Shown here: positions 29-28,412 of the stretch, piece after piece | How positions within the stretch are numbered: position 1 is the first letter of the stretch | Layout of the letters: each line of letters starts with the position of its first letter | Source of the DNA: Guillardia theta CCMP2712 | Taxonomy: Eukaryota; Protista; Cryptophyta | Assembly (NCBI RefSeq): GCF_000315625.1 | Contig: NW_005434531.1 | Span: forward strand, 124,631 to 156,752 | Length of the DNA: 32,122 bases | Reading direction: 5' to 3' | Made by a program: the position numbers and the translations under genes | Notes under the pieces: generated by a model | What the model saw: only the letters and a program-made list of their open reading frames with translations | Databases searched by the model: none | Told to the model about the DNA's origin: nothing

Positions 29-742
29 GTGGCTGCGACCGACCTGCTCGTTCCAGGCATCGGGGAGTTGGTAGGAGGAAGTCAGCGAGAGGAGCGACTG
101 GATGTTCTCGTCGACAAGCTGAAGGAGTTCGGGCTGTCCCCAGAGGTTGCTCCTCCTTCCTCAATTGCCCCTGCCTCCCCTTCTCCTTGTCCTTCTCCTC
201 CTCTCAAATACGCCTGCTGCTGCTGCTGCTGCTGCTGTCCTCCTTCTCCTGCTGCTGCTGCTGCTGCTGCTCCTCCTCCTCCTCCTCCTCCTCCTCCCGC
301 TCCTGCTCCTGCTTCTCCTCCTCCTCCCGCTCCTGCTCCTGCTTCTGCTCCCGCTCCCGCTGCTGCTGCTGCTCCCGCTCCTTGGTACATTGCTCGGCCC
401 TCTCTTCCTCTCTCCACCTGCTCCTCAGGATCAGCTGCTCCGCATCTCTTACAGCTTCTGTAGGACTATTGGTGGTATCTCGACCTGAGGAGATATGGAA
501 GCACTCCCCATGCCGGGTAAGAACTCTTCCTCCGTCCTCCTCCATCCTCCTCCTCCTCCTCCTCCTCCTGTCCCTCCTCCTCCTTCGTCCTCCTCCTCCA
601 TCAACCATGCTTTTTCCTTCCTCTCACGGTCTTGCTCAGCTACGGTCTTGGCTTCGAGCGCCTCGTCTGCTACGTGACTGCTACTGAGAACATCCGAGAC
701 GCTATCGCGTATCCTCGTTATCCCGGCAATGCTGAGTTCTAG
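29..742 (+). CDS. asnS: Asparaginyl-tRNA synthetase, bacterial/organellar type, 3' partial (exons 29-145, 464-516, 640-742)
   Basis: Splicing at GT-AG sites gives [27 protein letters not shown]...GLSPE|[18 protein letters not shown]|[33 protein letters not shown]. This is the class II aaRS motif 3 region typical of AsnRS. The gene begins upstream of the window. Confidence 0.95.
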
Positions 743-1139
743 AGAGAGTGGGGAGAGGGGAGGATAAAAACTCAACAAAGAACTCTGTTCTATCCCCGTC
801 ACAACATGGCGGAGGCGGCCTCCTCCTCCTGAGGAGGAGGAGGGGGAGGGGGAGGAGGAGGGAGAGGAGGAGGGACAGGTGTGAAAATCTGTACGAGTAG
901 TTGACGTAGTGGGAGGGGAGGGGAGGGGAGGGGAGGCAGGATTTGGTAGAAACAGGATTCACTGATAACATGTTACAAGTTGGAATCAACAGGATGCAAA
1001 AAACTAAAAACCACGGTGGGTACTTAAAAAGAAAAGGAAAATTGAAAAAAAAGGTGAAGAGAGGGAGGGAACAGCGTCAGCGATGAGAATCACTACAAGA
1101 AATGGTGACCATATGCACTCCAAGACCAAGTGCGAAGCT

Positions 1140-1220
1140 GTCATAGCGTTCGATGATTGTTTGCACGTCATAGCGTTCGATGATTGTTTGCACGTCATAG
1201 CGTTAGATGATTGTTTGCAC
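1140..1220. repeat. 3 x 27-bp tandem repeat overlapping the stop codon of the 1203-2906 gene
   Basis: GTCATAGCGTTCGATGATTGTTTGCAC at 1140-1166 and 1167-1193; the third copy at 1194-1220 has one substitution that creates the minus-strand TAA. Confidence 0.95.
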
Positions 1221-2906
1221 GGTGAACTTCCACGCGCCAGTCAGACCAGGAGAAGGGAAGTGATCGGAAGGAGCAGGGAGAGTTCGAACTTCTTTCAGCC
1301 AGCAAGTCTTCTTCTCATGAGTGAAGGCGGAGCAGGACGGGGTCGAATCGCACCTTGCGCAGCACGCCTCCGGCGTCTCTGCTGGAGCTTGAGCTTGGTC
1401 CATGATGAGAATGTCTCCCACTCCCTTGAACATCTCAACGTTGGTCTTGAACGTGTAAGCGGAGCAGTCGCCTGTCCCCTTCCTTGTCTGATGGATGTCG
1501 AAGGTGACGAATTGCCTGAAGAACTTTCTCATGACAAAGACGTCCCTGTCGTACTGGTGCACTATGACAGCCCTCTCGTTCCTTGAGTTGATGACCACGT
1601 CGTTGTTGAAGCTCATCCCAACCTTGCTCTGCAGGTGAGCTACGGGACCGTTGTACTGATCCAAGACGTGCAGCCCTGGCAGCGAGCCCTGGTGGACTAG
1701 AACATTGTGTATCCCCTGGTCCACCCCGTTGCGCTCGCAAGCTGCGAAGTTGGGCCCGTTGATCTCCTTGGCCATGGCGTCGAGGTACGACTGCACGTGC
1801 ATGGTCGTGCCGAGGCTGATCCCTGAGCAGATGATCTCCTTGGACGCTAGCTCGTCCACCTTTCCTTGCCCGAAGCAGCTCCGGATCCACCCGGTGTTCC
1901 AGTCATCTCCCATGATGTTGACAGACTCACTGAAGGTCCACAGCCCTGCCTCGCTCACGATGCTGAACGGGTCGGACTGGAACCCGGTATCCCTCACGTC
2001 CGCGAGCAGCACCTTGTTGAAGTTGTGCCCTACCCGCTTCAGAAAGCTCTGCATTAATACCCACCGGGTGGTGGAGGGATGGTACTTTCCTAGAGTCGCA
2101 GGGTCCAGGCTCACTCGGTTGACAGGGAGGACAGTGACATTGCGCTCCTGGAACTTGGATTGGAGGCGGGGGCTGACCACGTCCATGAACAGGATGATGG
2201 CGCAGTCGGAGAACTGCCGGAGGGACTCGACAAACACACAGACGTTGGCGTCGTGAATGCCGTCGGCCATGCCCAGCACCAAGTTCTTGTTCCCTGCTGG
2301 TGGCAGGAAGTCCGACCTCCCCGTGACGATCGAAGAAGCAGCTTCGCTCACGGACATTCTCGCGTCTGATCCCGCGGGTTTCTCCTTGACAAACGCTGGT
2401 GGCAGGAAGATTTCACTGGATCTGACCTGCTTCAAAGGAGGGGTGACTGCAGGGGCGGTCACCACTCCATGGCTGCCTTTTATCTCAATGAGGATCAAGT
2501 CAAGCCTGCGCTTAATCTCCTGCGTGTCCTCCTGAAACTTCATCTCCAGTGCATGGACAGTGGCCAGTCTCGTTTGCATCTGCTCCAACTTCTCCACGAA
2601 GCTCGAGATTTCCTCATATACCCCCGCAGCCTCTTCGGAGCTAGGGCCGCCTCTTCTTCGCATTGAAAGAAATTCAGCAGTCAACTTGTAAGGCACGAGC
2701 TCGTTGGTGGCTTCAAGCTTGGTTGTCTCTCGGGACCTCAGCGAAGAAGCTTGCGAAGTCTTGCCCTTGCTCCCTTGGTTGCTGATCATGACCATGAGCA
2801 GCAGAAATGCGATGGAGATCAGGAAGAGCCAGATGAAATTGTTCCTGCAGAAAATCTGTGATGACCTCATCTGTCTCGACGCATATATGTTCTCCTTCTT
2901 CTTCAT
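1203..2906 (-). CDS. Type II membrane glycosyltransferase-like protein (GT-A, DxD-like) with C-terminal PAN/Apple domain, 567 aa, intronless CDS
   Basis: N-terminal TM (FIWLFLISIAFLLLMVMI), coiled-coil stem, motifs LLADVRDTGFQSDPF, IICSGISLG, DQGIHNVL and VHQYDR, then Apple-type CCARCDSTPSCSAFT...CWLK. Confidence 0.8.
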   Translation of the reverse strand: MKKKENIYASRQMRSSQIFCRNNFIWLFLISIAFLLLMVMISNQGSKGKTSQASSLRSRETTKLEATNELVPYKLTAEFLSMRRRGGPSSEEAAGVYEEISSFVEKLEQMQTRLATVHALEMKFQEDTQEIKRRLDLILIEIKGSHGVVTAPAVTPPLKQVRSSEIFLPPAFVKEKPAGSDARMSVSEAASSIVTGRSDFLPPAGNKNLVLGMADGIHDANVCVFVESLRQFSDCAIILFMDVVSPRLQSKFQERNVTVLPVNRVSLDPATLGKYHPSTTRWVLMQSFLKRVGHNFNKVLLADVRDTGFQSDPFSIVSEAGLWTFSESVNIMGDDWNTGWIRSCFGQGKVDELASKEIICSGISLGTTMHVQSYLDAMAKEINGPNFAACERNGVDQGIHNVLVHQGSLPGLHVLDQYNGPVAHLQSKVGMSFNNDVVINSRNERAVIVHQYDRDVFVMRKFFRQFVTFDIHQTRKGTGDCSAYTFKTNVEMFKGVGDILIMDQAQAPAETPEACCARCDSTPSCSAFTHEKKTCWLKEVRTLPAPSDHFPSPGLTGAWKFTVQTII

Positions 2907-10072: not shown

Positions 10073-12817
10073 TCATCCTTCAAAGATGAACTTCACCCTG
10101 GACTTCTCCTGTGCTCGCCGAGGCGTCAAACGTGAACTGAGAGGAATCGAGTGCATGAACTGATCGGAGACTCGATTGTGCTGCCGCAGCTCGTGTGGGT
10201 TCACTGAGATGGTCAAGGGTTGAGCATCCTTCCAGACTCTGGGCCTGGGCGTCTCGATACTTGACCGTGAAGACATGTTTCCCTCCTCCTCTGCTCCCTC
10301 GTCCTCTGAAATGCTCAGGTCGAAGTCTGCCCCGACGATGGCCGATACGTCTCGCTGGAAATTTTGGTACAAGATAGAATTTTTCTTCCTGTGGACAAAC
10401 TTTGAACATACCCACACGGATGCCATATCGAGCTCCCGTTCGCGGTCAGACTTGACGTCATTGAAGATTGGAAAATTACCGTCAAGTCTACGATTTCTCC
10501 TCAACCGAACAAAACAATGACCGATGACTCTATCTGCTCCGAATTGAAACTGATCATACACAGATATCATGAAATACAATGCAAGATGTTTGCTGAACAT
10601 TCTCTCGTTCAGACTCATGCAGCCTTTGTACACGCCTTGCTGAAAATGATGTACTTTGCTGAACACAAATCGTTCGTTCCAAATCGGGTTTGAGTTCTGG
10701 AGCACACTCGAGCAAAACTCATGTTTGAACCTTACAGACTCTCCTTGGCTTGCATTCTTATCGCCGATCTTCTGCTGTAAGATGAGCTTCAGCTCGCCGT
10801 CGTCACCAGACGATGCTTTCCGGATCATGACAAGTGAGAGTGTACAATACACAGAGGGCTCCTTGGGCCATGTCAAACGTTGAGGGATATTTTGAGCCGA
10901 GATCAAGGACATTTCGACAGCAAACATGGTTGCATTGTCATGGGATGGTGACGAGGCCTTACTTTGGAAGGCTTCTTTTTCGTTTTTGTCCGGCTCAGAC
11001 TCGTCCTTGCTCTTTCTTTTGCTGTCGTTTCTTGAATTGACAGCAATCCTCTCCAGAAACCTTCTTGCAGAATGTTCTAGTGGTCCCGACAGTTTTCCAT
11101 TCTTGAGTTTCGAGTGCTTGAAAGAAGATTTTGCGATCGTATTCTTGTTGTTGGTCCCTGCACTCGCGTGAGAGACTCTGTCTTCAGATCGCCTGCTGAC
11201 TGTCTTGGACAGAGTAGCTACATCTGCAACCTGAAAACCAATTCTCAGCCTAACAGCAGCCTCTGCATCTTCAGTTGTGTTGAGAACAGGCTCGTGCTTG
11301 TGCTTGAAAAGAGGAAACCAGTCATCGATCGGGTTGCCGGGACGAACCTCTATCACGCACTTGCCGAGTAGAGGGGGACTTCCAAACTTTGCTCGCTCAT
11401 GCACACTGAGAAGGAGAAGGACGTTCTGCCCGTCAAGTGGCGAGTTGTTCACCGTCGACATGATTGTTCGTTGTGATTCGTCGTCCCTGACCACAACGAA
11501 GCTGGGTCTCTTCTCCACCAGCACGTGGGTCTCGTTCCAGACAGGAAACAAGCCTCGGACCTGCCTCGTGATTGCTTGCGGTCTGATCTTGAACGGGCCG
11601 TTGGCTTGGAATGAGTTCATACTCAGTGAGTCTTGACACTCAATACCGTGCTCCAGCTCCAGCTCTTCTTCCTCCGTCTTGTCCGCAAACAGCAACGAGA
11701 CCGCGCAGAACGTCTGAGGGATCAGACCAAAGACTTGGGAGTTTGGGAAGTTCCTGCCCTCGACCACTTGCAGGTCGAACGCATAGGCCGTCTGATCCTC
11801 GTGGTCGGATGGCAGCGATAGCACTTCATCCTCTTCCTCCACTGAGATGTCTGGCGAAAGCGTCGCCTGCTCCTCCTCTGCCGGCTGATCGAAGTGAACG
11901 TGAGCGAGTCCATGAGAGAGTTGGGCAGAGGTCAGTCGTCCATGAAGATGGTCAACGCTCGAGACTCGGGAGATGTCGGGAGAGGGCGGAGAGGCAGCGG
12001 CATCGAAGTCGTCGTCCTGCTGGCCTATGGGGGAGGTGTGGGATGGCGAGCCAGGAGAGCATCTGACGGCGTATCTCAACATCTTCCAGTGAGTCTTCGC
12101 TGCTGCATCTTCGTTGATCAGCCTTAACAACTCAAACTCGAGCTCACGGCTTGTCTGCTCGGACCAGTGCCTTCTAGGATGAAACCTTACCGTCGCCTTG
12201 AGCGCCTGCGCGTCGAACCCGACATCGACTCTTTTCCTATCTACCTGCAACGCATCCTGGACCTCATCCTGCAGAGCCCTTGGCACTATGTGGTCCTTGA
12301 AGTCCGAGATGTGATGGGAGAAAGAGACTGTGAGCATGTGTTCTGCCTCGGACTGCTGCAGGAGGGTGAGGGGAGGGCAGCCAAGGAAGTCAACGGCCGA
12401 CTAACCTCGCTCATCTCCGAGGGACTGGAGGTCGAAGACACTTGAAAGATATCTTCTGTGTGCGGGGACTCTGCCTCGTCCTCTTCCATCGCCTACAGAG
12501 TGTGAGGGCGTGCAGGGAGAAAGCACATGAAACCTGTTGCCGCAGGTCCACCTGAATGGTTTGCATGCTGTCCTTGCTTTCCTACAGGAGATGTTTGATC
12601 GTTGACGATAGAGACAGTAAGAGAAAGATAGAACCTTCCTTGACTCCCTCGTGCCTTCAATGACTTGTTTCCCTGGGACTTGGTATCCGATAGCTATAAG
12701 CTCCCTCTCCTGCGCTCTCTCCTGCGCCTGCTCCTGCTCCTTCCTTTCCTTGTCCTCTTGCATCTTTCTGCGCATCTGCGCCCTTTGTAGCGCCAGCTCT
12801 GAGACGCTCGTGAACAT
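10073..12817 (-). CDS. Protein with two C2 domains (4 exons; large last exon contains the 754-aa ORF)
   Basis: C2 signatures FDLQVVEGRNFP...PVWNETHVL and FAVEMSLISAQNIP...NPIWNERFVF. Three short GT-AG introns link the upstream exons in frame from the ATG at 12817 (MFTSVSELALQRAQ...). The start codon is uncertain. Confidence 0.8.
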
Positions 12818-13245: not shown

Positions 13246-13759
13246 TGACGTGAAAGGAACGACAAGTGATGTGTGGGGATTTGATGTCGGCACGAGTAAG
13301 ATAAGATGTGTGAAGTACTATGCGAAATTTGATGGAAATAGAGAGAGACGAACTAAGAAAGAGAGAAAGAGGAAAGAGAACTTGGGGAGATTGAGAGGCG
13401 GGGAGTAACGAGAGAACAGGGAGGAGACAAGATGAGAAGAGGGGAGGAGGTTCGAAGTTTTACTTCACATGTAGCAAGCAAGAGAAAGACATCAAGTGAA
13501 AGTGAGAGAGTTCCAAGATGGAATGCAATCATTTCGCTCACGCGCTGAAGAGGCTCGAACAGCATTAGCTACAAGAGAGGTTTCGCAGGCAGACATGCAT
13601 CGCTATAGTACATCTCCCGCTGAAGGCGCAGGATACTCCTCCATCGAGGAGGATGAAACTTTCGTTCCTCTTGGAAGTCGACTTGTTTCTGCAAAGAGAT
13701 CGCCATCCATGCCTCCCAGGCTGAGGAGACTGCGGAGGACGAGGACGAGGTTGAGAACA

Positions 13760-14985
13760 TTAGTAGTCAGACTTCTTGCCGGTGTCCTCCCCAAGAATCT
13801 GCAACAAGACTGTTAGAAATAAAGGGAGGGAGGACGAGGAGCTCTTACGAATTGTTTCGATCTGCCGATGCATCTGAGTTCACACGTGTATCAGCAAACA
13901 CTGCTTCCTATCAAGATTCATCTTTTACCTCATCATTGTCCGACGGCACTCGCCACACGTTAACCTCAAGGTCACTTTCTTGGTCACCTGTCCGCCCCAC
14001 CGTCAGCTCACGCACCAGCCAGCCTCTCACTCGCACGTACCTTGGCCTTCTTGTGGAAGATTGGTTTCTTCTGTCCTCCGAACCCTTGCATCTTGCGATC
14101 GTACCTTCGCTTTCCCTACACACGTACCTTTCACGTGACGCCTCTTCCTCCATCATGGCAACAGACCTGCGCTACAAGAGAAGCTGCGCCAGCCTTGTAC
14201 TGTGACACCTGAAGCTGCTCCATCATCGAGGAAGGCGAAGAAGAACAAGAAAGACCTTGTGCGTTTGATGCATGTTGCAATGGTTGCAATGACTGTGCAC
14301 AACAAAAGCTAGTGAGTCATGACATGCTGATCCCCTCCTCTGATGCCATGCTCTCCTCCTGATCCTCCACGGCAATCTCCACGGCAGCAGACTCATCCCT
14401 TCTTGTCTGTGCATTGCCCCCCACCCCAACTCCACCATCCTCACTTCTCAACGAAAATTTGTCTCTGCACATTCACTCACGTTCTCATTGTCTTCGGGCA
14501 TGAAACCATGGCGAGCAAGTTGGAGCCGCCGGAAAAGAGACCATCGCTGAGGAGAAGCATGAAGATGTCAGCTATGCATCCAAGAGCATGGACGGAAACC
14601 CACCTGGTTGCATGGCAATCGCAAAGGCAAGTCGTCTCATCACAGCCACCAGCAACGTCGGATTGAAACAAGATCCCCTGCAGGAGCCTTTGAGCGCATG
14701 TCGAACCAAGAAACATGAAGGATGAAGCCCCCTCTCATGCTCAACCATCGCTAAGACCTCTCATCGTGCCTAGTAGCCCCCAACTCTCTGCAACGCGCCA
14801 CTCACCTCGGCGTGCTCGGGCGATCCTTCGGCAGAGGAGCGCAGGGGCCGTGCTCCTAGAGAGCAGGAGAAGGGCCCAAGAGCAGGAAGGAAGGAGGAGG
14901 AGGCGAGAGAGGAGGAGGAGAGGAGCAGGAGCAGGAGCAGGAGATGTGCATCCCCGAGCACTGCCATCATGCGCGGCCGCACCAT
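13760..14985 (-). CDS. RPL36A: 60S ribosomal protein eL42 (L36a/L44) with N-terminal bipartite presequence; 9 exons
   Basis: Exons 14985-14806, 14677-14604, 14546-14481, 14292-14256, 14208-14167, 14115-14041, 13987-13929, 13873-13849, 13798-13760, all GT-AG and in phase. Mature part from the Met at 14509: [101 protein letters not shown]. The eL42 identity is secure; the presequence exons are less certain. Confidence 0.92.
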
Positions 14986-15059
14986 GGTTGTGGAAAGGGA
15001 TAGGTGGGTGGTGAGTCACTGAAGGGGTACACAGAACATACAAAGTTGGGGGTGCAGGG

Positions 15060-15375
15060 GGTGGTCAAAAAGTTTTGAGCCCAAACTTCTGAACTTTCTA
15101 ACTTCTGAACTTCTTAAGGCTCAGAAGTTTGAGTCACTGTCAGTCACTGCCTAGGCTAACTCTCCGAGGCTCCGGGAGTCCGGGCCGGTTCTGCGCCCGG
15201 CCCGCAGCCGGGGGGGGACGTGACTGCGGGGGCGGGGTGAGGGGCTGGCCCGGCTGGACTGAGTAACGGTCCGGGGCTCCGACTGCACAGCCTGACAGTC
15301 TCAAAGTGACTCGGTGGCCAACCCCCCGCGACAGTTCTCCGAGCGCAGTCACGGCGACAGTCGGATCCTTTGGGG
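15060..15375. promoter_or_regulatory. GC-rich intergenic island 2, upstream of the eL42 gene
   Basis: Inverted repeat CAAACTTCTGA/TCAGAAGTTTG (15082-15131), TGAGTCA at 15130 (another at 15012), then a CCGG-rich block. Confidence 0.45.
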
Positions 15376-15449: not shown

Positions 15450-18400
15450 CTACCCGATGGGTTCGGACAGAGCAGCGTAGATGTCGAAGAAGGAGATGAG
15501 GTCTCGCTCGTACATGCTGTGAAGCTCCTCGCTCAGCTCCTCCACCTGCCTCATCAGCTCCCTCGTCTCCTCCTCCTCCTTCGCTGCCTGCGCCGCCGTC
15601 GCTGCAGCCTCCTCCTCCTCCTTCGCGGCTCTGGCCGCGGCCTCCTCCTCCTCCTCCTTTCGTCTGGATGCTTCTTCTTCCTCTGCCCTCCTGGCCTCCT
15701 CCTCCGCATCAGTCTCAGGAGGTGCGTCCTCCTCGCTCTTCCCAGCTGCCTCCACCTGCACCTCTGCCAGCGCCTCTCCTTGCTGCGAAGTTGTGGATGA
15801 GCAGGGGGAGGGAAGAAAAGTTTACAGGTGTCACCTGATCCTCTTGATCGTTCTTTGGGGTAGCGGGTTCCTGCTCCTGCTCCTTGGGTTGTCCATCTTC
15901 ATCGCGTCCTGTCCTTTGGTTAGTCGCAACTTTCTGGATAGAGGACAGAGAGGAGAGAGAGGAGAAGAGGTGGACGACTTTGTGAGAGGAAGGAAAAGAG
16001 GAAGAGGAGGAAGAGGAAGAGGAGGAAGAGGAAGAGGAGGAAGAGGAAGAGGAGGAAGAGGAGGAAGAGGAAGAGGAGGAAGAGGAAGAGGAAGAGGAGG
16101 AAGAGGAAGAGGAAGAGGAGGAAGAGGAAGAGGAGGAAGAGGAAGAGGAAGAGGAAGAGGAGGAAGAGGAAGAGGAGGAAGAGGAAGAGGAGGAAGAGGA
16201 AGAGGAGGAAGAGGAGGAAGAGGAAGAGGAGGAAGAGGAAGAGGAGGAAGAGGAAGAGGAAGAGGAGGAAGAGGAAGAGGAAGAGGAGGAAGAGGAAGAG
16301 GAAGAGGAGGAAGAGGAAGAGGAGGAAGAGGAAGAGGAAGAGGAGGAAGAGGAAGAGGAAGAGGAGGAAGAGGAAGAGGAAGAGGAAGAGGAAGAGGAAG
16401 AGGAAGAGGAGGAAGAGGAAGAGGAAGAGGAAGAGGAGGAAGAGGAAGAGGAAGAAGAGGAAGAGGAAGAGGAAGAGGAGGAAGAGGAAGAGGACAGTNN
16501 NNNNNNNNNNNNNNNNNNNNNNNNNNNNNNNNNNNNNNNNNNNNNNNNNNNNNNNNNNNNNNNNNNNNNNNNNNNNNNNNNNNNNNNNNNNNNNNNNNGG
16601 AGGAGGAGGAGGAGGAGGATGAATGACCTGGGATGCATTGGAGGCCTGCGGAGGGTCAGAGGAGCTGGAGGGGAATGGAAACGAGTCACCTTAGAAGCCT
16701 TGGAGATGTTTGACAACTTTGACGCTTGCGAGGACACAGACTCCTGAGAACCCGTCAAATACAACTCTCCTGCTCCTCCTGCTCCTCCTGCTCCTCCTGT
16801 ATCCATCGCGCTCCTCCACTTCCTTCTCTGACCTTATCCTCCTTTCTCCCCGACTTGTTCCCCTGTCTCGTTCTACCACCGCACCCTCCTTCCTCCTCCA
16901 CCTCCCCTCTGCTACTGCCTTGCCCTCTCCCTCCTCTCACCGATACGGATGCCCTGCTCTGAGAGCGCAACTCATCGAAGTCCTCCAGCATCTCCTTCTC
17001 TTCCTCCTCCCGTCTCTCCTCCTCCTCGCGTGCATCTGCGTTGTCGAACAGCTCCACCATCCTCCTCCTCGCTGCGTTTCTTGCTCCGTGTCCTCTGAAC
17101 ACTCGCTGGATCGTCATCGCAGCCTGCCAGCGCCCGTCATACCTGCTACATGCTCCTTCCAACCCTACCTGCTCCTCTTCTGGGGTGGACTGCTCCTCCT
17201 CCTCTTCCTGCTGGAACAAGCATCAGTATCCCTCTCCTCTCCTCTCCTCTCCTCTCCCCCTCCCCAATTTCTCCCTCTCCTCCCCGTTTGTTTCCTGCCT
17301 CCTCCTCCTCTTCTCCTCCTCCTCCTCCTCCTGCTGCTTCTGTTCTCCTCCTCCTCCTCCTGCTCTGTTCTCCTCCTCCTCCTGTTCTCCTGTTCCTCCT
17401 CCTGCTTCTGTTCTCCTGCTCCTCCTCCATACCGGCATTGAATCCAGGAGCTCTTGCAAGTAGACCTGCACCCTCCCCCGCTCCCTGTGTCCTCTCCACA
17501 CCCTCTGCACCGTCATCGCTGAGAAATGCATCGCTCGGCTGCTCGTGACCGCGTACCGGCTCCTCACCTCCTCCTCCTCCTCCTCCCGCGGCATCTTCTT
17601 CACTTCCTTCCTTGCCGCATGGCCCCGCATGACCCTCTGCAGGCAGACAGCAGCTTCGTGCTCCTCTGCCCTCCTCACCAGCTCCTTCCTCGCCCGATGC
17701 CCACGGAAAACTTTCTGCACCCTCAGCGCCGCTGCGCTGGCGCCCACGTCCATAGTGAGGAGGCGGTACCTCCTCCTCCCCCGATGACCATGGAAGACTC
17801 GTTGGATCTGAATGGCGGCAAACTCCTCCGCCAGGCTCTGCCGCAGCCTCGCTCGCTCCATGTGCCCTCGGTACGTCGCCTGCAGCCGCAGGGCCGACCG
17901 CGTCTGGCGGATCAGGAGGAAGCCTTGCCTCCTCCCCACGTGGCCCCTGTACACTGACTGCAGCTTCTGCGCACACGCCTCCTCCCACTCCAGCAGCCTC
18001 ATCATCGCTACCACCTGCCGGTGGTGGACGGCGAACCTCCTCGATATGTGCCCCCTGTAGACAGCCTGCAGCCGGTTGGCCGCGTGCTGCCTGCGAACGA
18101 CGAGCATGTCGAGCCTCGAGATGTGCCCTCGGTAGACGGACTGGATCTTACACGCAAGGAAGTTCATCCTTCTGAACCTCGTCAGCTCTCGCCCCCAGTG
18201 TCCTCGGAGGACGGACTGGATCCTCATAGCCGCTTCGAACTCGATCTCCGACATCTGAAGCTCCCGCTCAGCGTTCGCCTCCAGTCGAGCCAGGTGGCCC
18301 CTGTACACAGCCTGCAGCTTGTTAGCTGCCATGATGATCCGATCGATCGCTCGTTGTTTCTTCTTCCCTCGATAGACGTTCCTCCCGAGATGCCCTCGGT

Positions 18401-19355
18401 AAACAGCTTGCAACTTAGTCACAGCAAACTCATCCAGCTCCAGCGCCTGGTACATCTCCTCCTCCTTCGCCATCCTCCTACCCACATGCCCGCGCCACAC
18501 GGCCTGCAGCTTCGTCGCTGATCGTCGCCTCCACTCCCTCCTCCACTCCTCTCGTCGCTTCGCGATGCTCCTCCGCACCAGATGCGCTCGGTAGGTTGCC
18601 TGGATCCTCGTCGAGCTGAACTTCTCCAGCTCCTCCCACTGCTTGATGCTCTCCTCCCGTATCTTGAGGCGAACAAGATGCCCACGGTAGACCGCCTGAA
18701 TGTCTGCAGCCGCGTCATCCAGCCTCTTCTTGCCCAGCAGCCTCCTGAAGTATCTTCTCGCGTACATGCTCCTGACCGCGCACTGCAGCAGGATTGCGGA
18801 CGAGTTCACCTTCACGGCTGCTCGGTTGTCGATGAGGATCTTCTTGAGCTTCATGAACAAGGAGCGGTAGTACTCGTCGAGAGGATGCTCCCACGAGCTC
18901 ACCCCCGACACGCTGTTGTAGTAGAACACGTTGCCGTTGGCGTCCGTGTGCTCCGACCATCCCTCTGGCAGAGCAGCACACAGCGCCTCCTCCGCGATCC
19001 ACAGCAGGTTCACGTCTCCAATAGGGTCCATGCCGATGTAGCGCGCGTAGTCGACGATCTCCTGTGCTGTTGGACCTCCCCGCTCCTGCGCATCGATAGG
19101 GCTGGAATGTTGGAAGTTCGGCATGGGAGGTGGACCCCCGCCGTGCCCCCTCACAGATCGGGTCATGTTGCTGGGGGGTCGATTGGCAGCAGCAGGGTCC
19201 CTTCCCCCATGTGCGATGATGCTAGACACCCTCTCGTCCACGACCGAACCTATCATCCCTTTACCCATGGACGTAGCGCCGAATGTCGGATTCGAAATCG
19301 ATTGTCCTAGACTTTGCCTGTTCGTCATGGCGCCGCCTCCGTTCGTTCTCATCAT
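15450..19355 (-). CDS. CEP164-type N-terminal WW domain + about 16 IQ calmodulin-binding motifs + acidic coiled-coil tail (multi-exon)
   Basis: EIVDYARYIGMDP...LLWIAEEALCAALPEGWSEHTDANGNVFYYNSVSGVSSWEHPLDEYY, followed by repeated [IL]QxxYRGHxxR. Exon 1 is 19355-17433; further in-frame exons lie at about 17210-16945, 16745-16690, 15935-15835 and 15782-15450. The 3' end is uncertain and one intron contains the assembly gap. Confidence 0.85.
15984..16494. repeat. About 510-bp uninterrupted polypurine (GAG/GAA)n tract, intronic
   Basis: Only A and G on the + strand, made of mixed GGAAGA and GGAGGAAGA units; it abuts the scaffold gap. Confidence 0.95.
16499..16598. other. Assembly gap (100 N, probably unknown size)
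   Basis: Exactly 100 N. Confidence 0.99.
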
Positions 19356-22188: not shown

Positions 22189-25100
22189 ATGGAAGCGATG
22201 GAGATCGACGAAGCGCTCTACAGCAGACAGCTGTACGTGCTCGGCCATGAGGCCATGCGACGAATGCAGGTATGTACACAATGATAGAGGAGAAGGAGGA
22301 CGAGGAGGACGAGGAGGACGAGGAGGAAGAGTTGAATTTCTCTCTTTTGAATTTCTCTCTCGGCAAAATAGCGAAGGAAATAGTGACTTTCACAGGGCGT
22401 TGCTGTCACAAACTTGTACCACTAGCTAGCGCAGGCAGGGATTCACACTTGATTTTGGGTGAGAGGGAGAGTAGATGGAGGATAAAATTTGATGCATGAC
22501 CGGAAATATCCGATCCTTTGTGGTCATCGCAAAGTATCATGTGGAAGTGAAATGAAAGATTCTTGGATACACCTTGAAGAGACAATATATATATACCGCA
22601 AGATAACTTCTCCTCACTTGAACTCGCAGGCCAGCAACATTCTTTTGTCTGGGTGCAAGGGTTTGGGTGTAGAGATAGGTAACCTCATCAAGTTGGTTTT
22701 TTATGATTGCTGACATGAAAGCAGGCAAGAATCTGGCTCTTGCTGGAGTCAAATCGCTCTCCCTCTATGACCCGAACCCAGTGGAACTAGCTGATCTTTC
22801 ATCTCAGGTGCAGTAAAAGTGTATCCGGTGTCCCGAAACTGATTATGTGCTCCAGTTTTACTTCACCGAGGAGGACGTAGGCAAGAATCGAGCTGAAGTG
22901 TCTGCAGCTCGTTTGCGTGATCTGAACCCCTACGTGAGCATCGAGGTGTGCAAGGCAGAGCTTGACAAGGACTGTCTCAAGCAATTCAAGGTAGGGACTT
23001 CTTCTCCACTTGTACACAAGTACATCATGATAGCCTTCACAGGTTGTGGTTCTGTCAGACTGCTCGTTCGAGCGTGCCCTGCAAATCAATGACATTTGTC
23101 ATGACATCGGCGTCCAATTTCTGTTTGCCCAGTACGTCTTCGGCTTGCACGATGATCGCATGTTGACTTCCTACAGGTCGAAGGGTGTATTTGGAAACGT
23201 ATTTGTGGACTTTGGAAAGGATTTCACTGTGTTTGATACTAACGGAGAAGAGCCTACATCAGCGATGATTTCTGCGATCTCATCGGTAGGGATACTGAGC
23301 CCTCGGAATTCTACTGACTCTTGCACGCAGGAGAATCCTGGTGTTGTCACTACCTTGGATGAAGCCAGACATGGGTTGGAGAGTGGGGACCACGTCACTT
23401 TTACCGAGATCCAGGGCATGACAGAGTTGAATGGTTGTGAACCGATTCGCATCGAAGTCACAGGTTGTTCTCGTGCGCGAGATCTGGAGGGTGCTGACAT
23501 GAGGGAAAGGACCCTATACTTTCACGATTGGCGACACCAGCAAATTCTCGCCCTACACCACTGGGGGATACGTGAAGCAAGTGAAAATGCCTCAGAAAGT
23601 TTCGTTTGTAAGCAACCTGCAGCATGTTTTGATCTGTACTTGACAGTTTTGTTCAGAAATCTATGCGCGAATCTCTTGTGGAGCCTGAATTCGTCCCTTC
23701 TGATTTTGCCAAAATGGACAAGCAGGAGCAAATTATGCTTGGGTTTTATGCTTTGGATGAGTTCGCCAAGCAAAAGGGCGAAGCTCCACGTCCTGGCAAC
23801 ATGGAACATGCGAAGGAGGTGATCAAGCTTGCCAAAGAGTTGAGCTCCAAGCACAACAACCTTGTGTCGGAATTCGATGAGAAGCTGCTCACTCAAATGT
23901 CGCTGAATGCCAGGGGAGATCTCTCGCCGATGGCGGCAGTTCTCGGAGGCATCGTTGCGCAGGAAGCATTGAAGGCATGTTCTGGAAAGTTCATGCCGAT
24001 CAAGCAATGGTTTGTGTACGATGTCATCGAGGCTTTACCGGAGGATTACTTGCCAGAGGACGAAGTGAAAGCTCAGGGATCACGATATGACGGTCAGATA
24101 GCAGTCTTCGGGAAGACTTTCCAGGATAAGATTACGAACTTGAACTACTTTCTTGTCGGTGCAGGTGCGATTGGATGTGAGATGCTGAAGAACTGGGCGA
24201 TGATGGGCTTGGCTAGCGCTCCAAAAGGCTGCATCCACATTACCGATATGGACACGATTGAGAAGTCGAATCTGAACAGACAATTCTTGTTCAGGGCTAC
24301 AGATATCCAGAAGCTCAAGTCGACGACTGCAGCCGAGGCAGTGACCCGAATGAACAAAGATCTGAACATCAAGTGCTACTCCACCCGTGTTGGCCCAGAC
24401 ACCGAAGAGTTGTTCGATGATGCCTTCTTCGAAAGCCTCGACGGCGTTTGCAATGCCCTTGACAACGTTCAGGCCCGTCTCTATGTCGATCAAAGATGTA
24501 TATATTATCAGAAACCACTCCTTGAATCTGGAACCTTGGGAACCAAGGGGAATGTGCAAGTGGTAGTTCCCAACCTAACGGAGTCCTACGGCTCTTCCAG
24601 AGACCCTCCTGAGAAGTCAATCCCGATTTGCACGCTCAAGAACTTTCCGAATGCGATCGAACATACAATCCAGTGGGCGAGAGACGAGTTCGAGGGTTTG
24701 TTCAAACAGGTCAGGGCGAGAGGGATTCTACGTGGTTCATGACGCTGCGTTCAGGCTGCAGAAGATGCTAATACCTACTTGAGCGACAGCGAGTACGTTT
24801 CCAAGTTGAAGAAACAGCCGGGAACAGGATTATCCACCCTCGAGATTCTTCGGGACAACTTGGTGTGTTGTGAACCCCGATTCTTCATGGAATGTTGATA
24901 GTGAATTTTGCAGGTTGCCAAGAAGCCAAAATCCATGACGGACTGCATTGTGTGGGCTAGATTGAAGGTGAATGACGATTTAAGTTTGCAGGACAAAGAC
25001 GTTGAATTCTTTTGTACAGTTCGAAGAGCTCTTTGTAAATAATATTAAGCAATTGCTCTTCAACTTCCCTTTGGACATGGTGACGGCTGGTGGAACTCCT

Positions 25101-26693: not shown

Positions 26694-28412
26694 TCAGGTG
26701 CTGCGGTCGCCGCCAGGCCCGAACCTGCTGAGCTGAGCCATGAAGGGATCGCTGGCAAACTGCTGCCAGTTAGCTTGATACATTCCCATCAGCTTGCGGC
26801 TCGTCGCCTCGTACTCCTCCTGGGAGGCCCAGGTGTTCCTCGGGTTCAGCACGTGCGCGTCGACGCCTGGAAGAGCGAGAGGGACGGAGAGCTGGAAGCA
26901 AGGATCGGGAGACGAGAAGGTCGCCTCCTCGATGGACCCGTCGAGGATTGCAGCCACGATCGCCCTCGTCGTGTTGATGTCCATGCGCCTGCCGGTCCCG
27001 TAGGAGCCGCCGGACCATCCGGTGTTGACAAGGAAGACTTGGCAGCCGTGCTGCTCGATCTTGCTGCGGAAGAGCTGTGCGTACACGCGGGCAGGAAGGG
27101 GCATGAAGGCACCCCCGAAGCAGATGGAGAAGGTTGGGGTCGGCTCAGTGATGCCCATCTCCGTCCCTGCCACCTTGGACGTGTAGCCGCAGACGAGGTG
27201 GTAGAGAGCCTGCTCGGTAGAGAGGCGAGAGACCGGAGGGAGCACCCCGAAGGCGTCGCACGTGAGGAAGATGACGTTGCGAGGAGGAGGAGCGGTGCCG
27301 CTGGGCTGGTAGTTGGGGATGTGCCACATGGGATAGCTTCCTCGCGTGTTCTCCGTCTTACTGATGTCCTTGTAGTCCGGCCGGCCGTGCTGATCCAGTA
27401 CAATGTTCTCTAGGATAGCGTTCTCCTTGATCGCGGCATGAATCAGGGGCTCCTTGCTAGGGTCCAGGTCGATCATCTTGGCGTAGCATCCTCCCTCCAG
27501 GTTGAAGATCCCCTCCTCGTCCCAGCCGTGCTCGTCGTCTCCGATGAGGAAGCGGGTGGTGTCAGCCGAGAGCGTCGTCTTGCCCGTCCCGCTAAGCCCG
27601 AAGAAGATGGCCGTGTCTCCTCCCTTCCCCACCGTCGCAGAGCAGTGCATGGACATGATGTTCTGCAGGGGGAGGTAGTAGTTCATCATCGAGAAGGCTC
27701 CCTTCTTCATCTCTCCTGAGTACTCCGTCCCTGTGATGACCGACAGCCCGCGGTTCAGGTCGAGTGCGACGCAAGTCTCGCTCCGCAGCCCAGCCTCCTT
27801 CCATCCCTCGAACAGGTACCTGCTGTTGAGAATCGTGATGTCCGGCTTGAAGCTCGCAAGCTCCTCCTCTGTCGGGCGGATGAACATGTTGGTGCAGAAG
27901 TGGTGGTGCCATGCAAGCTCCGTCACCACCCGCACGGCCTTGCGGGAGGACCGGCTCGCCCCCACGAAGCCGTCGAAGACAAAAACTTCTTCCAGCCCGC
28001 AGAGTCTCTTAGCGCTTCCCTCCATGACCTTGTCGAACACTTCCTCCGTAATCCCTCTGTTGATGTCTCCCCATCCCACCTTGCTCGCGGCCTCTCCCGC
28101 GTTCACGATGTAGCGGTCCTTCGGGCAGCGTCCGGTGAACTTGCCCGTGTCGACCAGGAGAGCCTCGCTCTCTTGCACCAGCGATCCCTCCCCTCGAGCA
28201 AGGATCTTGGCTCTCACGTCCTCGAAGGACATGTTGCGGTGGCATCCTGGGTGGTCCAGGAAGTTGAACGGCACGGCTGGCTCCACTAACTTGGAGGTAG
28301 TGTAGGTGGCAAGCTTCAGGGTCTGCTCGACCACGTTGTCGCAACTTTCTTGGCGAACGTTGAACATGTTCTTGGTGTTGATGGTGAAGTCGTTGGATGT
28401 GGAGCTTGCCAT
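26694..28412 (-). CDS. pckA: Phosphoenolpyruvate carboxykinase (ATP), 572 aa, intronless CDS
   Basis: TGKFTGRCPKD, YSGEMKKG, P-loop FFGLSGTGKTTLS, IGDDEHGW, FNLEGGCYAK, ENTRGSYP, LVNTGWSGG. Confidence 0.97.
   Translation of the reverse strand: MASSTSNDFTINTKNMFNVRQESCDNVVEQTLKLATYTTSKLVEPAVPFNFLDHPGCHRNMSFEDVRAKILARGEGSLVQESEALLVDTGKFTGRCPKDRYIVNAGEAASKVGWGDINRGITEEVFDKVMEGSAKRLCGLEEVFVFDGFVGASRSSRKAVRVVTELAWHHHFCTNMFIRPTEEELASFKPDITILNSRYLFEGWKEAGLRSETCVALDLNRGLSVITGTEYSGEMKKGAFSMMNYYLPLQNIMSMHCSATVGKGGDTAIFFGLSGTGKTTLSADTTRFLIGDDEHGWDEEGIFNLEGGCYAKMIDLDPSKEPLIHAAIKENAILENIVLDQHGRPDYKDISKTENTRGSYPMWHIPNYQPSGTAPPPRNVIFLTCDAFGVLPPVSRLSTEQALYHLVCGYTSKVAGTEMGITEPTPTFSICFGGAFMPLPARVYAQLFRSKIEQHGCQVFLVNTGWSGGSYGTGRRMDINTTRAIVAAILDGSIEEATFSSPDPCFQLSVPLALPGVDAHVLNPRNTWASQEEYEATSRKLMGMYQANWQQFASDPFMAQLSRFGPGGDRST

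What the first reader, a model, noticed from the sequence alone, without database searches (positions are those of the whole stretch)
13760..14985. Hidden 9-exon eukaryotic ribosomal protein eL42 with a signal + transit-like presequence: candidate host-supplied subunit of the nucleomorph (periplastid) ribosome
Seen: splicing of micro-exons (25-75 nt, apart from exon 1) yields a complete but divergent eL42, with GKRRYDRK, [15 protein letters not shown] and two CxxC zinc ligand pairs. Three upstream in-phase exons add about 97 aa: [51 protein letters not shown]...[10 protein letters not shown]. Established: cytosolic eL42 starts at MVNxPK with no leader; cryptophytes keep 80S ribosomes in the periplastid compartment (PPC); signal + transit peptides without Phe at +1 are retained in the PPC. 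Inference: this is a nucleus-encoded subunit imported to complete the endosymbiont's ribosome, by gene transfer or host replacement.
Basis: partly seen in the sequence, partly recalled or inferred. Interest (0 to 1): 0.88.

Follow-up and report, generated by a model that had tools for sequence, protein, structure and literature searches.

The report
Imported eL42 for the nucleomorph ribosome
This is a real, expressed nine-exon gene of the cryptophyte alga Guillardia theta for a second, divergent ribosomal protein eL42 with a secretory-type leader, most likely shipped into the relic endosymbiont cytoplasm to complete its ribosomes; the principle has been published since 2012, but the public gene model misses the whole leader.

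Summary
Observation confirmed. On the minus strand, nine GT..AG exons (14985 to 13760) give a 198-aa protein. It has a 97-aa leader and a 101-aa eL42 core with both zinc-binding Cys pairs. Single RNA contigs from three studies carry all eight junctions and reach past ATG 14985.

The genome is Guillardia theta CCMP2712. A canonical, leaderless eL42 lies on another contig. Published tables list no eL42 gene in three cryptophyte nucleomorphs.

The public model of this gene ("L36Ae_2, cytoplasmic type", 85 aa) starts at an internal Met in exon 4. It lacks the leader and the first CxxC.

I recovered leader-bearing orthologues from Cryptomonas curvata, C. paramecium and environmental contigs. They form one clade and share a conserved pre-core module: acidic stretch, CxC, SLW-like, then an invariant Ala before Met-Val. 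The extension is therefore coding and under selection.

That clade is sister to the cryptophyte host-type eL42 and shares a derived Lys-to-Gly change with it. This favours duplication of the host gene over endosymbiont gene transfer, but no red algal sequence could be included.

The principle of nucleus-encoded periplastid ribosomal proteins is already published (Curtis 2012, cited by Maier 2013). This is a well-documented member of a known kind, with a corrected gene model. First readers of this scan noted similar leader-bearing eL22 and eL38 genes elsewhere in this genome.

The parts
14986..15013 (-). 5' UTR, minimum extent seen in RNA
   Evidence: X1 contig covers 14914-15013 and the X2 contig reaches 14992. 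There is no ATG between 15013 and 14985.
14902..14985 (-). Exon 1, codons 1-28: signal-peptide-like segment (two Arg, an eight-Leu core, then SSSSLA)
   Evidence: Kyte-Doolittle maximum is 2.8 over 9 residues. Ser at -3 and Ala at -1 precede residue 29. SignalP was not available.
14830..14901 (-). Exon 1, codons 29-52: transit-peptide-like segment (7 Ser, 2 Arg, no acidic residue; starts SSSF)
   Evidence: Composition. It resembles published PPC training windows that start with Ser and have Phe a few residues in.
14806..14829 (-). Exon 1, codons 53-60: start of the acidic pre-core region
   Evidence: The junction 14806/14677 is seen in RNA.
14604..14677 (-). Exon 2: acidic, Cys-rich part of the pre-core module (contains CLCDC)
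   Evidence: Junctions are in RNA contigs of three runs. The CxC is conserved in orthologues.
14481..14546 (-). Exon 3: end of the pre-core module (…[11 protein letters not shown]), then the ancestral eL42 start MVSCPKTMR (Met at 14509-14507)
   Evidence: Ala-Met-Val is invariant in 11 orthologues.
14256..14292 (-). Exon 4: first zinc pair (HCNHC). The public 85-aa model P0172 starts at the internal ATG 14273-14271
14167..14208 (-). Exon 5 ([14 protein letters not shown])
14041..14115 (-). Exon 6: GKRRYDRK…[15 protein letters not shown], the most conserved eL42 block
   Evidence: PF00935 gives 30.8 bits against a cut-off of 25. Also.
13929..13987 (-). Exon 7: second zinc pair (TCGEC)
   Evidence: PF00935 gives 16.2 bits for positions 45-66.
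13849..13873 (-). Exon 8, a 25-nt micro-exon (CIGRSKQF)
   Evidence: Both flanking junctions are in RNA contigs.
13760..13798 (-). Exon 9, coding part and TAA stop
13270..13759 (-). 3' UTR, as far as RNA contigs reach
   Evidence: The X2 contig extends to 13270; X1 and X6 extend to about 13444-13450.

Best explanation
The gene encodes the eL42 (L36a/L44e) subunit of the 80S ribosomes in the periplastid compartment (PPC), the relic cytoplasm around the nucleomorph of Guillardia theta. The nucleomorph has no eL42 gene, so the host nucleus supplies one.

Shown here:
- The mRNA and its nine exons.
- The eL42 identity of the core.
- A separate canonical cytosolic copy in the same genome.
- Conservation of the N-terminal extension in other cryptophytes.

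Inferred route: the N-terminal signal peptide takes the nascent chain through Sec61 into the ER lumen, which is continuous with the outermost plastid membrane. The Ser/Arg-rich transit-like segment takes it across the periplastid membrane by the ERAD-derived SELMA machinery. Without an aromatic residue at +1 it stays in the PPC.

More speculative: the conserved pre-core module ends in an invariant Ala directly before the ancestral Met-Val, which suggests a processing site that releases a near-native eL42 N-terminus.

Origin: most likely a duplicate of the host's own eL42 that gained a leader. The PPC ribosome would then be chimeric.
For: - Gene model and expression.
- eL42 identity and intact zinc ligands and core motifs.
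- Only two eL42 loci in the genome. The other is canonical, intronless in its CDS, leaderless, with an in-frame stop upstream.
- Organism: P0122 and P0172 are NCBI proteins of Guillardia theta CCMP2712. The assembly has 87,145,349 bases in 669 contigs.
- Nucleomorph gene lists lack rpL36A in three cryptophytes (PMC3879969 Table S2). The same paper states that some PPC ribosomal proteins are host-nucleus encoded.
- Leader-bearing orthologues:
  - Cryptomonas paramecium P0282 has a hydrophobic N-terminal signal, then about 140 aa, then …ALLA|MVKCPK.
  - Environmental P0180 has …AALLLTCSGAHA|E…, then a basic part, then an acidic CxC part, then …ASLA|MVCFPK.
  - BLAST alignments to the window protein extend 30-45 residues upstream of the core Met.
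  - Ala-Met-Val is invariant in 11 sequences.
- In orthologue L044 the frame stays open for 156 codons upstream of the core Met.
- PPC-type sequences form a clade (98/97) sister to host-type cryptophyte eL42 (93/81). The G-R-x-K-x-F signature occurs in 61 of 272 fetched eL42s. All identified ones are cryptophyte host-type or PPC-type; a few carriers are unnamed environmental or MMETSP sequences. 208 others have K-R.
- Context: of five 80S families without a nucleomorph gene, four have two or more nuclear loci (eL42 2, eL22 3, eL38 2, eS7 2, eL37 1). Three families with a nucleomorph gene have one locus each (eL27, eL32, eL34).
- The divergent eS7 and eL38 copies also carry signal-type leaders.
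Against: - No localisation experiment and no SignalP or ASAFind run.
- The signal peptide and cleavage site rest on hydrophobicity and the -3/-1 rule. A second permissible site (SSS|F) would put Phe at +1, the stromal signature.
- The first 24 post-signal residues lack acidic residues, which is more typical of stromal transit peptides (PMC12136025).
- Absence from the nucleomorph rests on a published table, not on a sequence search here.
- The 45 residues before the core Met are acidic, unlike a transit peptide. Their role is unknown, and AlphaFold2 gives them pLDDT below 50.
- The origin call lacks red algal, Goniomonas and other outgroup sequences. The sister relation has support 93/81 only.
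Confidence: 0.8

Rival explanations
1. The upstream 97 codons are a 5' leader or uORF-like region. Translation starts at Met 14509 and gives a second cytosolic eL42 paralogue.
For: The public annotation names the gene 'L36Ae_2, cytoplasmic type' and has no leader. The core Met sits inside exon 3, so a leaderless product would be possible from a downstream start. RNA contigs cannot show transcript 5' ends.
Against: - ATG 14985 is the first AUG in the observed mRNA and has a strong context.
- The frame stays open across two splice junctions.
- The extension is kept in frame with conserved residues in Cryptomonas and environmental orthologues, with an invariant Ala before Met-Val.
- The frame is open for 156 codons in L044.
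- The public model is plainly truncated, because it lacks the first zinc pair.
Confidence: 0.03
2. The leader is real but sends the protein elsewhere in the secretory or plastid route: plastid stroma, ER lumen or secretion.
For: An alternative cleavage after SSS would expose Phe at +1. The transit-like part has no acidic residues.
Against: - An 80S-type eL42 has no known partner in the 70S plastid ribosome or the ER lumen.
- The best -3/-1 site gives Ser at +1. This matches published PPC windows that start with Ser and have Phe at +6 or +7.
- Orthologue P0180 has Glu at +1.
- The only compartment that lacks its own eL42 gene is the PPC.
Confidence: 0.07
3. Same function, different origin: the gene came from the red algal endosymbiont by nucleomorph-to-nucleus transfer, not from duplication of the host gene.
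For: The divergent eS7 copy of the same genome has a red alga (Gracilariopsis) as its best named non-cryptophyte hit, so endosymbiont-derived PPC ribosomal proteins may exist. No red algal eL42 was in my trees. Cryptista and Archaeplastida may be close relatives.
Against: The PPC clade is sister to host-type cryptophyte eL42 (93/81) and away from green plants. Both share the K-to-G change and AKVTKK.
Confidence: 0.25
4. A decaying or functionless duplicate.
For: In the first tree, which had no other PPC-type sequence, its end branch was 1.17 against a median of 0.086. Once orthologues were added it was 0.21 against 0.14. 11 of 57 highly conserved columns are changed.
Against: It is expressed and fully spliced in several independent runs. 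The ORF is intact and the zinc ligands and core motifs are kept. An orthologous clade is conserved across genera.
Confidence: 0.02

Closest known systems
Cytosolic eL42 (human RPL36A, yeast Rpl42, Pfam PF00935 Ribosomal_L44)
   Same: Full-length match to the family. Four zinc-binding Cys are present, as are GKRRYDRK and the GGQxKP(I/V)FHKKAK loop. About 55-60% identity to canonical proteins.
   Different: It carries a 97-aa N-terminal extension. Eleven otherwise conserved positions are changed (for example T52K, Q45M, C86S, H88Q). The C-terminus is shorter.
Public model of this gene: 'large subunit ribosomal protein L36Ae_2, cytoplasmic type [Guillardia theta CCMP2712]' (P0172, 85 aa)
   Same: 100% identical to residues 114-198 of the RNA-supported protein.
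   Different: It starts at an internal Met in exon 4. It therefore lacks exons 1-3, the leader, the ancestral N-terminus and the first CxxC.
Nucleus-encoded PPC-targeted proteins of cryptophytes with bipartite leaders (Gould et al. 2006; Curtis et al. 2012; ASAFind 2.0, PMC12136025)
   Same: Signal-peptide-like start, then a Ser/Arg-rich segment with a non-aromatic residue at the best predicted +1 position. The cleavage window looks like the published PPC training windows.
   Different: Between the transit-like part and the mature protein lies a further conserved acidic CxC module. I did not find it described in the held library.
Other leader-bearing 80S ribosomal protein copies in this genome (eS7_2 on C99, second eL38 on C15; eL22 copies noted by first readers)
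   Same: A second, divergent copy of a family that has no nucleomorph gene, with a signal-type N-terminus.
   Different: Their leaders end in a ubiquitin-tail-like RLRGG directly before the mature protein. The eL42 leader has no RLRGG and ends …SGGSNLLA before Met.
Nucleomorph-encoded rpl44 of the chlorarachniophyte Bigelowiella natans
   Same: The same ribosomal protein serving a PPC ribosome (Table S2).
   Different: There the gene stayed in the nucleomorph. In cryptophytes it is nuclear and the protein must be imported.

Membership tests
eL42 / Ribosomal_L44e (PF00935) | Profile match over the whole domain, above the curated cut-off | tested here: met
   Exon 6 alone gives 30.8 bits against a cut-off of 25. 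The spliced protein scores 131.7 bits over profile positions 1-101 of 105 in a local HMM built from 30 eL42s.
eL42 / Ribosomal_L44e (PF00935) | Zinc ribbon with two Cys pairs | tested here: met
   HCNHC and TCGEC align with the canonical ligand columns.
eL42 / Ribosomal_L44e (PF00935) | Conserved basic loop GKRRYDRK…GGQxKPxFHKKAK | tested here: met
   Present. T52K and V55I are the only changes in this block.
eL42 / Ribosomal_L44e (PF00935) | Incorporation into a 60S subunit | not testable with these tools
   Needs proteomics or cryo-EM of PPC ribosomes.
Cryptophyte PPC-targeted preproteins (bipartite signal) | N-terminal ER signal peptide | tested here: inconclusive
   The basic n-region, eight-Leu core and SLA site fit the classic pattern. 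Orthologues P0282 and P0180 also start with hydrophobic signals. No trained predictor was available.
Cryptophyte PPC-targeted preproteins (bipartite signal) | Transit-peptide-like segment after the signal peptide | tested here: met
   Residues 29-52 hold 7 Ser, 2 Arg and no Asp or Glu.
Cryptophyte PPC-targeted preproteins (bipartite signal) | No aromatic residue at +1 of the transit peptide | tested here: inconclusive
   The best -3/-1 site gives Ser at +1. An alternative site three residues on gives Phe. The rule is taken from PMC12136025.
Cryptophyte PPC-targeted preproteins (bipartite signal) | The function is needed in the PPC and is not encoded by the nucleomorph | not tested
   Taken from Maier et al. 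2013 Table S2: no rpL36A in three cryptophyte nucleomorphs. Nucleomorph sequences could not be searched here.
Cryptophyte PPC-targeted preproteins (bipartite signal) | Experimental PPC localisation | not testable with these tools
   Needs a GFP fusion or immuno-EM.
Leaders ending in a ubiquitin-like RLRGG tail (seen in eS7_2 and eL38 of this genome) | RLRGG directly before the mature N-terminus | tested here: not met
   The leader ends …[12 protein letters not shown] before Met-Val. None of the 11 orthologues has RLRGG.

The most novel reading that the evidence does not exclude
The conserved pre-core module (acidic stretch, CxC, SLW-like motif, invariant Ala before Met-Val) is a so far undescribed element specific to imported PPC eL42. 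It could be a dedicated processing site or an assembly or nucleomorph-delivery signal. It would work as an alternative to the RLRGG-tail design of other imported ribosomal proteins. The PPC ribosome would be a true chimera that uses a host-derived eL42 paralogue on endosymbiont rRNA.
Probability: 0.3. Interest if true: 0.6.

Novelty: new member of a known kind. Interest (0 to 1): 0.42.

Why it matters
This is a concrete, RNA-verified case of the host nucleus supplying a core part of the endosymbiont's own translation machinery.

It corrects a truncated public gene model, and models like it hide the targeting leader from proteome-wide predictions. The eS7_2 model is cut in the same way, so published counts of PPC-targeted ribosomal proteins may be too low.

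The conserved pre-core module and the likely host-paralogue origin give testable handles on two questions:
- How imported ribosomal proteins are matured in the periplastid compartment.
- How chimeric the nucleomorph ribosome is.

Tried and rejected
1. The search of protein representatives with the exon-1 peptide, to reach the annotated full protein, returned only a low-complexity 863-aa protein. The reason emerged later: the public model lacks exon 1.
2. The look-up of encoding contigs with a neighbouring ORF failed, because records of the window's own genome are withheld.
3. The spliced 198-aa protein has no reference, so I did not type it into any search tool. All comparisons of it were run locally on fetched sequences.
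4. Curtis et al. 2012 is not held. Its content is cited only through PMC3879969 and PMC5635652.
5. ASAFind scoring was not run, because it would have meant typing large matrices. I compared the cleavage window by eye with the published PPC windows.
6. AlphaFold2 on orthologue P0180:70-203 with an 11-sequence alignment gave mean pLDDT 57.5, and the pre-core module stayed below 50. It says nothing about structure, and I ran no fold search.
7. A 'G inserted after 14919' appears in raw reads and in one contig. I reject it as a frame problem. Those reads fit only about 14906-14941, a CTC/CTG low-complexity stretch, and continue into unrelated sequence. The full spliced contigs cross the site with no gap.
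8. The odd long 'joints' (13755>14912, 14251>14920, 14943>15566) have 21-letter sides in the same repeat. I take them as artefacts.
9. The first tree, without orthologues, placed the window protein on a very long branch. It was superseded.
10. No 5' signal-peptide exon could be defined in L044.

Full report
**What is in the sequence**

Read on the minus strand, 14985 to 13760 holds nine exons bounded by canonical GT..AG introns:
- 14985-14806
- 14677-14604
- 14546-14481
- 14292-14256
- 14208-14167
- 14115-14041
- 13987-13929
- 13873-13849
- 13798-13760

Joined, they give 597 nt and 198 codons. Residues 1-97 are an N-terminal extension. Residues 98-198 start [10 protein letters not shown] and are a complete eL42.

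A profile I built from 30 canonical eL42 proteins aligns to residues 98-196 over profile positions 1-101 of 105 (131.7 bits). Exon 6 alone passes Pfam's cut-off for PF00935 in the six-frame genome search (30.8 against 25 bits). Both zinc pairs and the GKRRYDRK…[13 protein letters not shown] loop are kept. 46 of 57 columns that are at least 90% conserved in canonical proteins are unchanged.

**Is it transcribed as read?**

Yes. Contigs from three RNA data sets of three studies (X1, X2, X6) each carry all eight junctions in one molecule, with no mismatch or gap. The X2 contig is colinear from 13270 to 14992, and a further X1 contig reaches 15013. So ATG 14985 lies in the mRNA and is preceded by at least 28 nt with no other ATG. 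It has A at -3 and G at +4, and an in-frame stop lies 11 codons upstream.

A high-depth spike and some odd joints at 14906-14941 come from a CTC/CTG low-complexity run that attracts unrelated transcripts. The apparent one-base insertion there belongs to those foreign reads, not to this mRNA.

**Which organism, and is there another eL42?**

The assembly has 87,145,349 bases in 669 contigs. Proteins identical to its products are NCBI entries of Guillardia theta CCMP2712.

The genome holds exactly two eL42 loci. The other is G000:C30:232491-232718. It has an uninterrupted 107-codon CDS that starts MVNFPK, with a stop 21 codons upstream in frame. It is identical to transcript-derived ORF P0001. 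The two copies share 58 of 101 residues.

**Does the nucleomorph need it?**

Maier et al. 2013 (PMC3879969) list the ribosomal protein genes of four nucleomorphs. The rpL36A row is empty for G. theta, Hemiselmis andersenii and Cryptomonas paramecium, and filled (rpl44) only for Bigelowiella natans. The same paper states, citing Curtis et al. 2012, that some proteins of the periplastid 80S ribosome are encoded in the nucleomorph and others in the host nucleus. I could not search nucleomorph DNA myself.

As context, I counted nuclear loci for eight 80S families.

| Family | Nucleomorph gene | Nuclear loci |
|---|---|---|
| eL42 | no | 2 |
| eL22 | no | 3 |
| eL38 | no | 2 |
| eS7 | no | 2 |
| eL37 | no | 1 |
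| eL27 | yes | 1 |
| eL32 | yes | 1 |
| eL34 | yes | 1 |

The sample is small (four of five against none of three), but it points the expected way.

**The public model is truncated**

The NCBI protein for this gene is P0172, named 'large subunit ribosomal protein L36Ae_2, cytoplasmic type'. It is 85 aa long and equals residues 114-198 of the RNA-supported protein. It starts at ATG 14273 inside exon 4, so it lacks the leader, the ancestral N-terminus and the first CxxC.

The annotators therefore knew of a second 80S-type copy, but the leader is absent from the public record. The same holds for the second eS7 copy (see the side observations at the end).

**Orthologues show that the extension is coding**

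The spliced protein could not be sent to search tools. I therefore scanned metagenome contigs for a degenerate pattern of the derived GGQKKP(I/V)FHKKAK block.

One of the 28 hits, L044, is 69.6% identical to the window core, against 56% to the host copy. It has the core Met preceded by 156 open codons, ending …GGWGGLA before MVCCPK.

Using its second exon as a referenced query returned the truncated G. theta model and a set of 140-270-aa eL42 proteins. These come from Cryptomonas curvata (P0173), C. paramecium (P0174, and its full-length form P0282) and Baffinella frigidus (P0177), plus many environmental contigs.

- P0282 starts with a hydrophobic signal, followed by about 140 Lys/Ser/Pro-rich residues and then …SSALLA|MVKCPK.
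- P0180 has …AALLLTCSGAHA|E…, a basic stretch and an acidic stretch, then …CDVCSCVH…SLWENTRGPAASLA|MVCFPK.
- In G. theta the same place reads …[21 protein letters not shown]|MVSCPK.
- BLAST alignments of the window protein to these orthologues extend 30-45 residues upstream of the core Met.
- In an 11-sequence alignment, the Ala before Met-Val is invariant. The preceding Leu and one Cys of the CxC are nearly so.

A non-coding leader would not behave like this.

**Targeting**

- Residues 1-28 have the classic signal-peptide layout: Arg3 and Arg5, eight Leu, then SSSSLA.
- Residues 29-52 are Ser-rich with two Arg and no acidic residue.
- Residues 53-97 are acidic (8 Asp/Glu, no Lys or Arg) with four Cys.

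The rule that PPC proteins lack Phe or a similar residue at +1 of the transit peptide is taken from PMC12136025. Its PPC training windows include several that start with Ser and have Phe at +6 or +7, like SLA|SSSF here.

The caveat is that cleavage three residues later (SSS|F) is also allowed by the -3/-1 rule and would give the stromal signature. The functional argument decides for me: an 80S protein has a partner only in the PPC.

**Origin**

With the orthologues added, the PPC-type sequences form a clade (98/97). It has a Guillardia-Cryptomonas subclade (100/96) and an environmental subclade (96/91). The clade is sister to the host-type cryptophyte eL42 clade (99/94), with support 93/81 for the pair, and lies away from green plants, amoebozoans and opisthokonts.

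Both types share a Lys-to-Gly change in …(I/L)GR(C/S)K.F. It occurs in 61 of 272 fetched eL42 proteins. All identified carriers are cryptophyte host-type or PPC-type, and a few are unnamed environmental or MMETSP sequences; 208 others keep Lys.

This favours duplication of the host gene followed by gain of a leader. No red algal, glaucophyte or Goniomonas sequence was among the fetched proteins, so I rate this at about 0.6 against 0.25 for endosymbiotic transfer.

**Comparison with what is known**

- The core is a member of the eL42 family.
- The leader fits the bipartite class defined by Gould et al. 2006 and used by Curtis et al. 2012.
- Host-supplied PPC ribosomal proteins are already published as a principle.
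- New relative to the records I could reach: the full gene model, the comparative proof that the extension is conserved, the pre-core module, and the sister relation to the host copy.
- AlphaFold2 gave no confident structure for the module.

**Side observations**

- The divergent eS7 copy on C99 reads as a signal peptide, a short linker, then MRLRGG directly before the Met at which its public model (P0145, 'S7e_2, cytoplasmic type') starts.
- The divergent eL38 copy on C15 has …PLRLRGG directly before the eL38 start.
- A published G. theta PPC window (gt_85468) also contains LRLRGG.
- No paper in the held library combines RLRGG with periplastid.
- The eL42 leader does not use this design.

**Verdict**

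The kind is known, and this is a well-documented member with a corrected model and a few new details. Interest is moderate.

Noticed in passing
G000:C99, locus L021:609-1130 (minus strand): The divergent second eS7 copy reads as a signal peptide (MKAFLTVATLLLAVFPCTSG), a short linker, then MRLRGG directly before the Met where the public model P0145 ('S7e_2, cytoplasmic type') begins. The public model lacks this leader. Its best named non-cryptophyte hit is the red alga Gracilariopsis chorda (35% identity).
   Followed up: partly
G000:C15, locus L022 nt 719-976 (plus strand): The divergent second eL38 copy has …AGEPLRLRGG directly before the eL38 start (GSLQIYEIK, with the next exon reading DFLTITRRKDARLV…). 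A ubiquitin-tail-like RLRGG thus ends the leader of at least two imported-type ribosomal proteins. It also occurs in the published PPC window gt_85468. No held paper links RLRGG with periplastid.
   Followed up: partly
G000:C30, locus L001 about nt 1320-1450: The public model of the canonical eL42 (P0122, 140 aa, 'L36e_1, cytoplasmic') has a 33-aa hydrophobic N-terminal extension joined through a 32-nt GT..AG 'intron'. Transcript-derived ORFs (P0001) are 107 aa. The extension is probably a model artefact, but I did not check it with reads.
   Followed up: no
G000:C18:22719-22841: Only one eL37 locus was detected, although no eL37 gene is listed for any nucleomorph in the published table. A micro-exon copy may have escaped the six-frame search, or the PPC ribosome may do without eL37 or share the host protein.
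   Followed up: no
window 14906-14941: The CTC/CTG low-complexity run that encodes the Leu/Ser stretch of the signal peptide attracts many unrelated RNA contigs (summed depth near 5000). It produces false joints and a false one-base insertion in read layouts.
   Followed up: yes
window about 15080-15125 (minus strand, upstream of the gene): Two close copies of GTTCAGAAGTT lie about 100-140 nt upstream of the ATG. They may be a promoter element or chance.
   Followed up: no
window 26694-28412 (-), 23663-24742 (+), 17223-19355 (-), 10073-12337 (-), 1203-2906 (-): Long ORFs in the window carry these Pfam domains: ATP-dependent PEP carboxykinase (637 bits); a ubiquitin-activating E1 fragment (ThiF, E1_4HB, SCCH); IQ repeats plus WW; a C2 domain; a PAN domain. 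None shows a link to the eL42 gene.
   Followed up: partly
L044 (Ga0209555_10107065) nt 565-1074: The environmental PPC-type eL42 orthologue has a single intron in its core (after …KIHQ), three codons away from G. theta intron 4, against six introns in the G. theta core (eight in the whole gene). Intron density in this gene differs strongly between cryptophyte lineages.
   Followed up: partly
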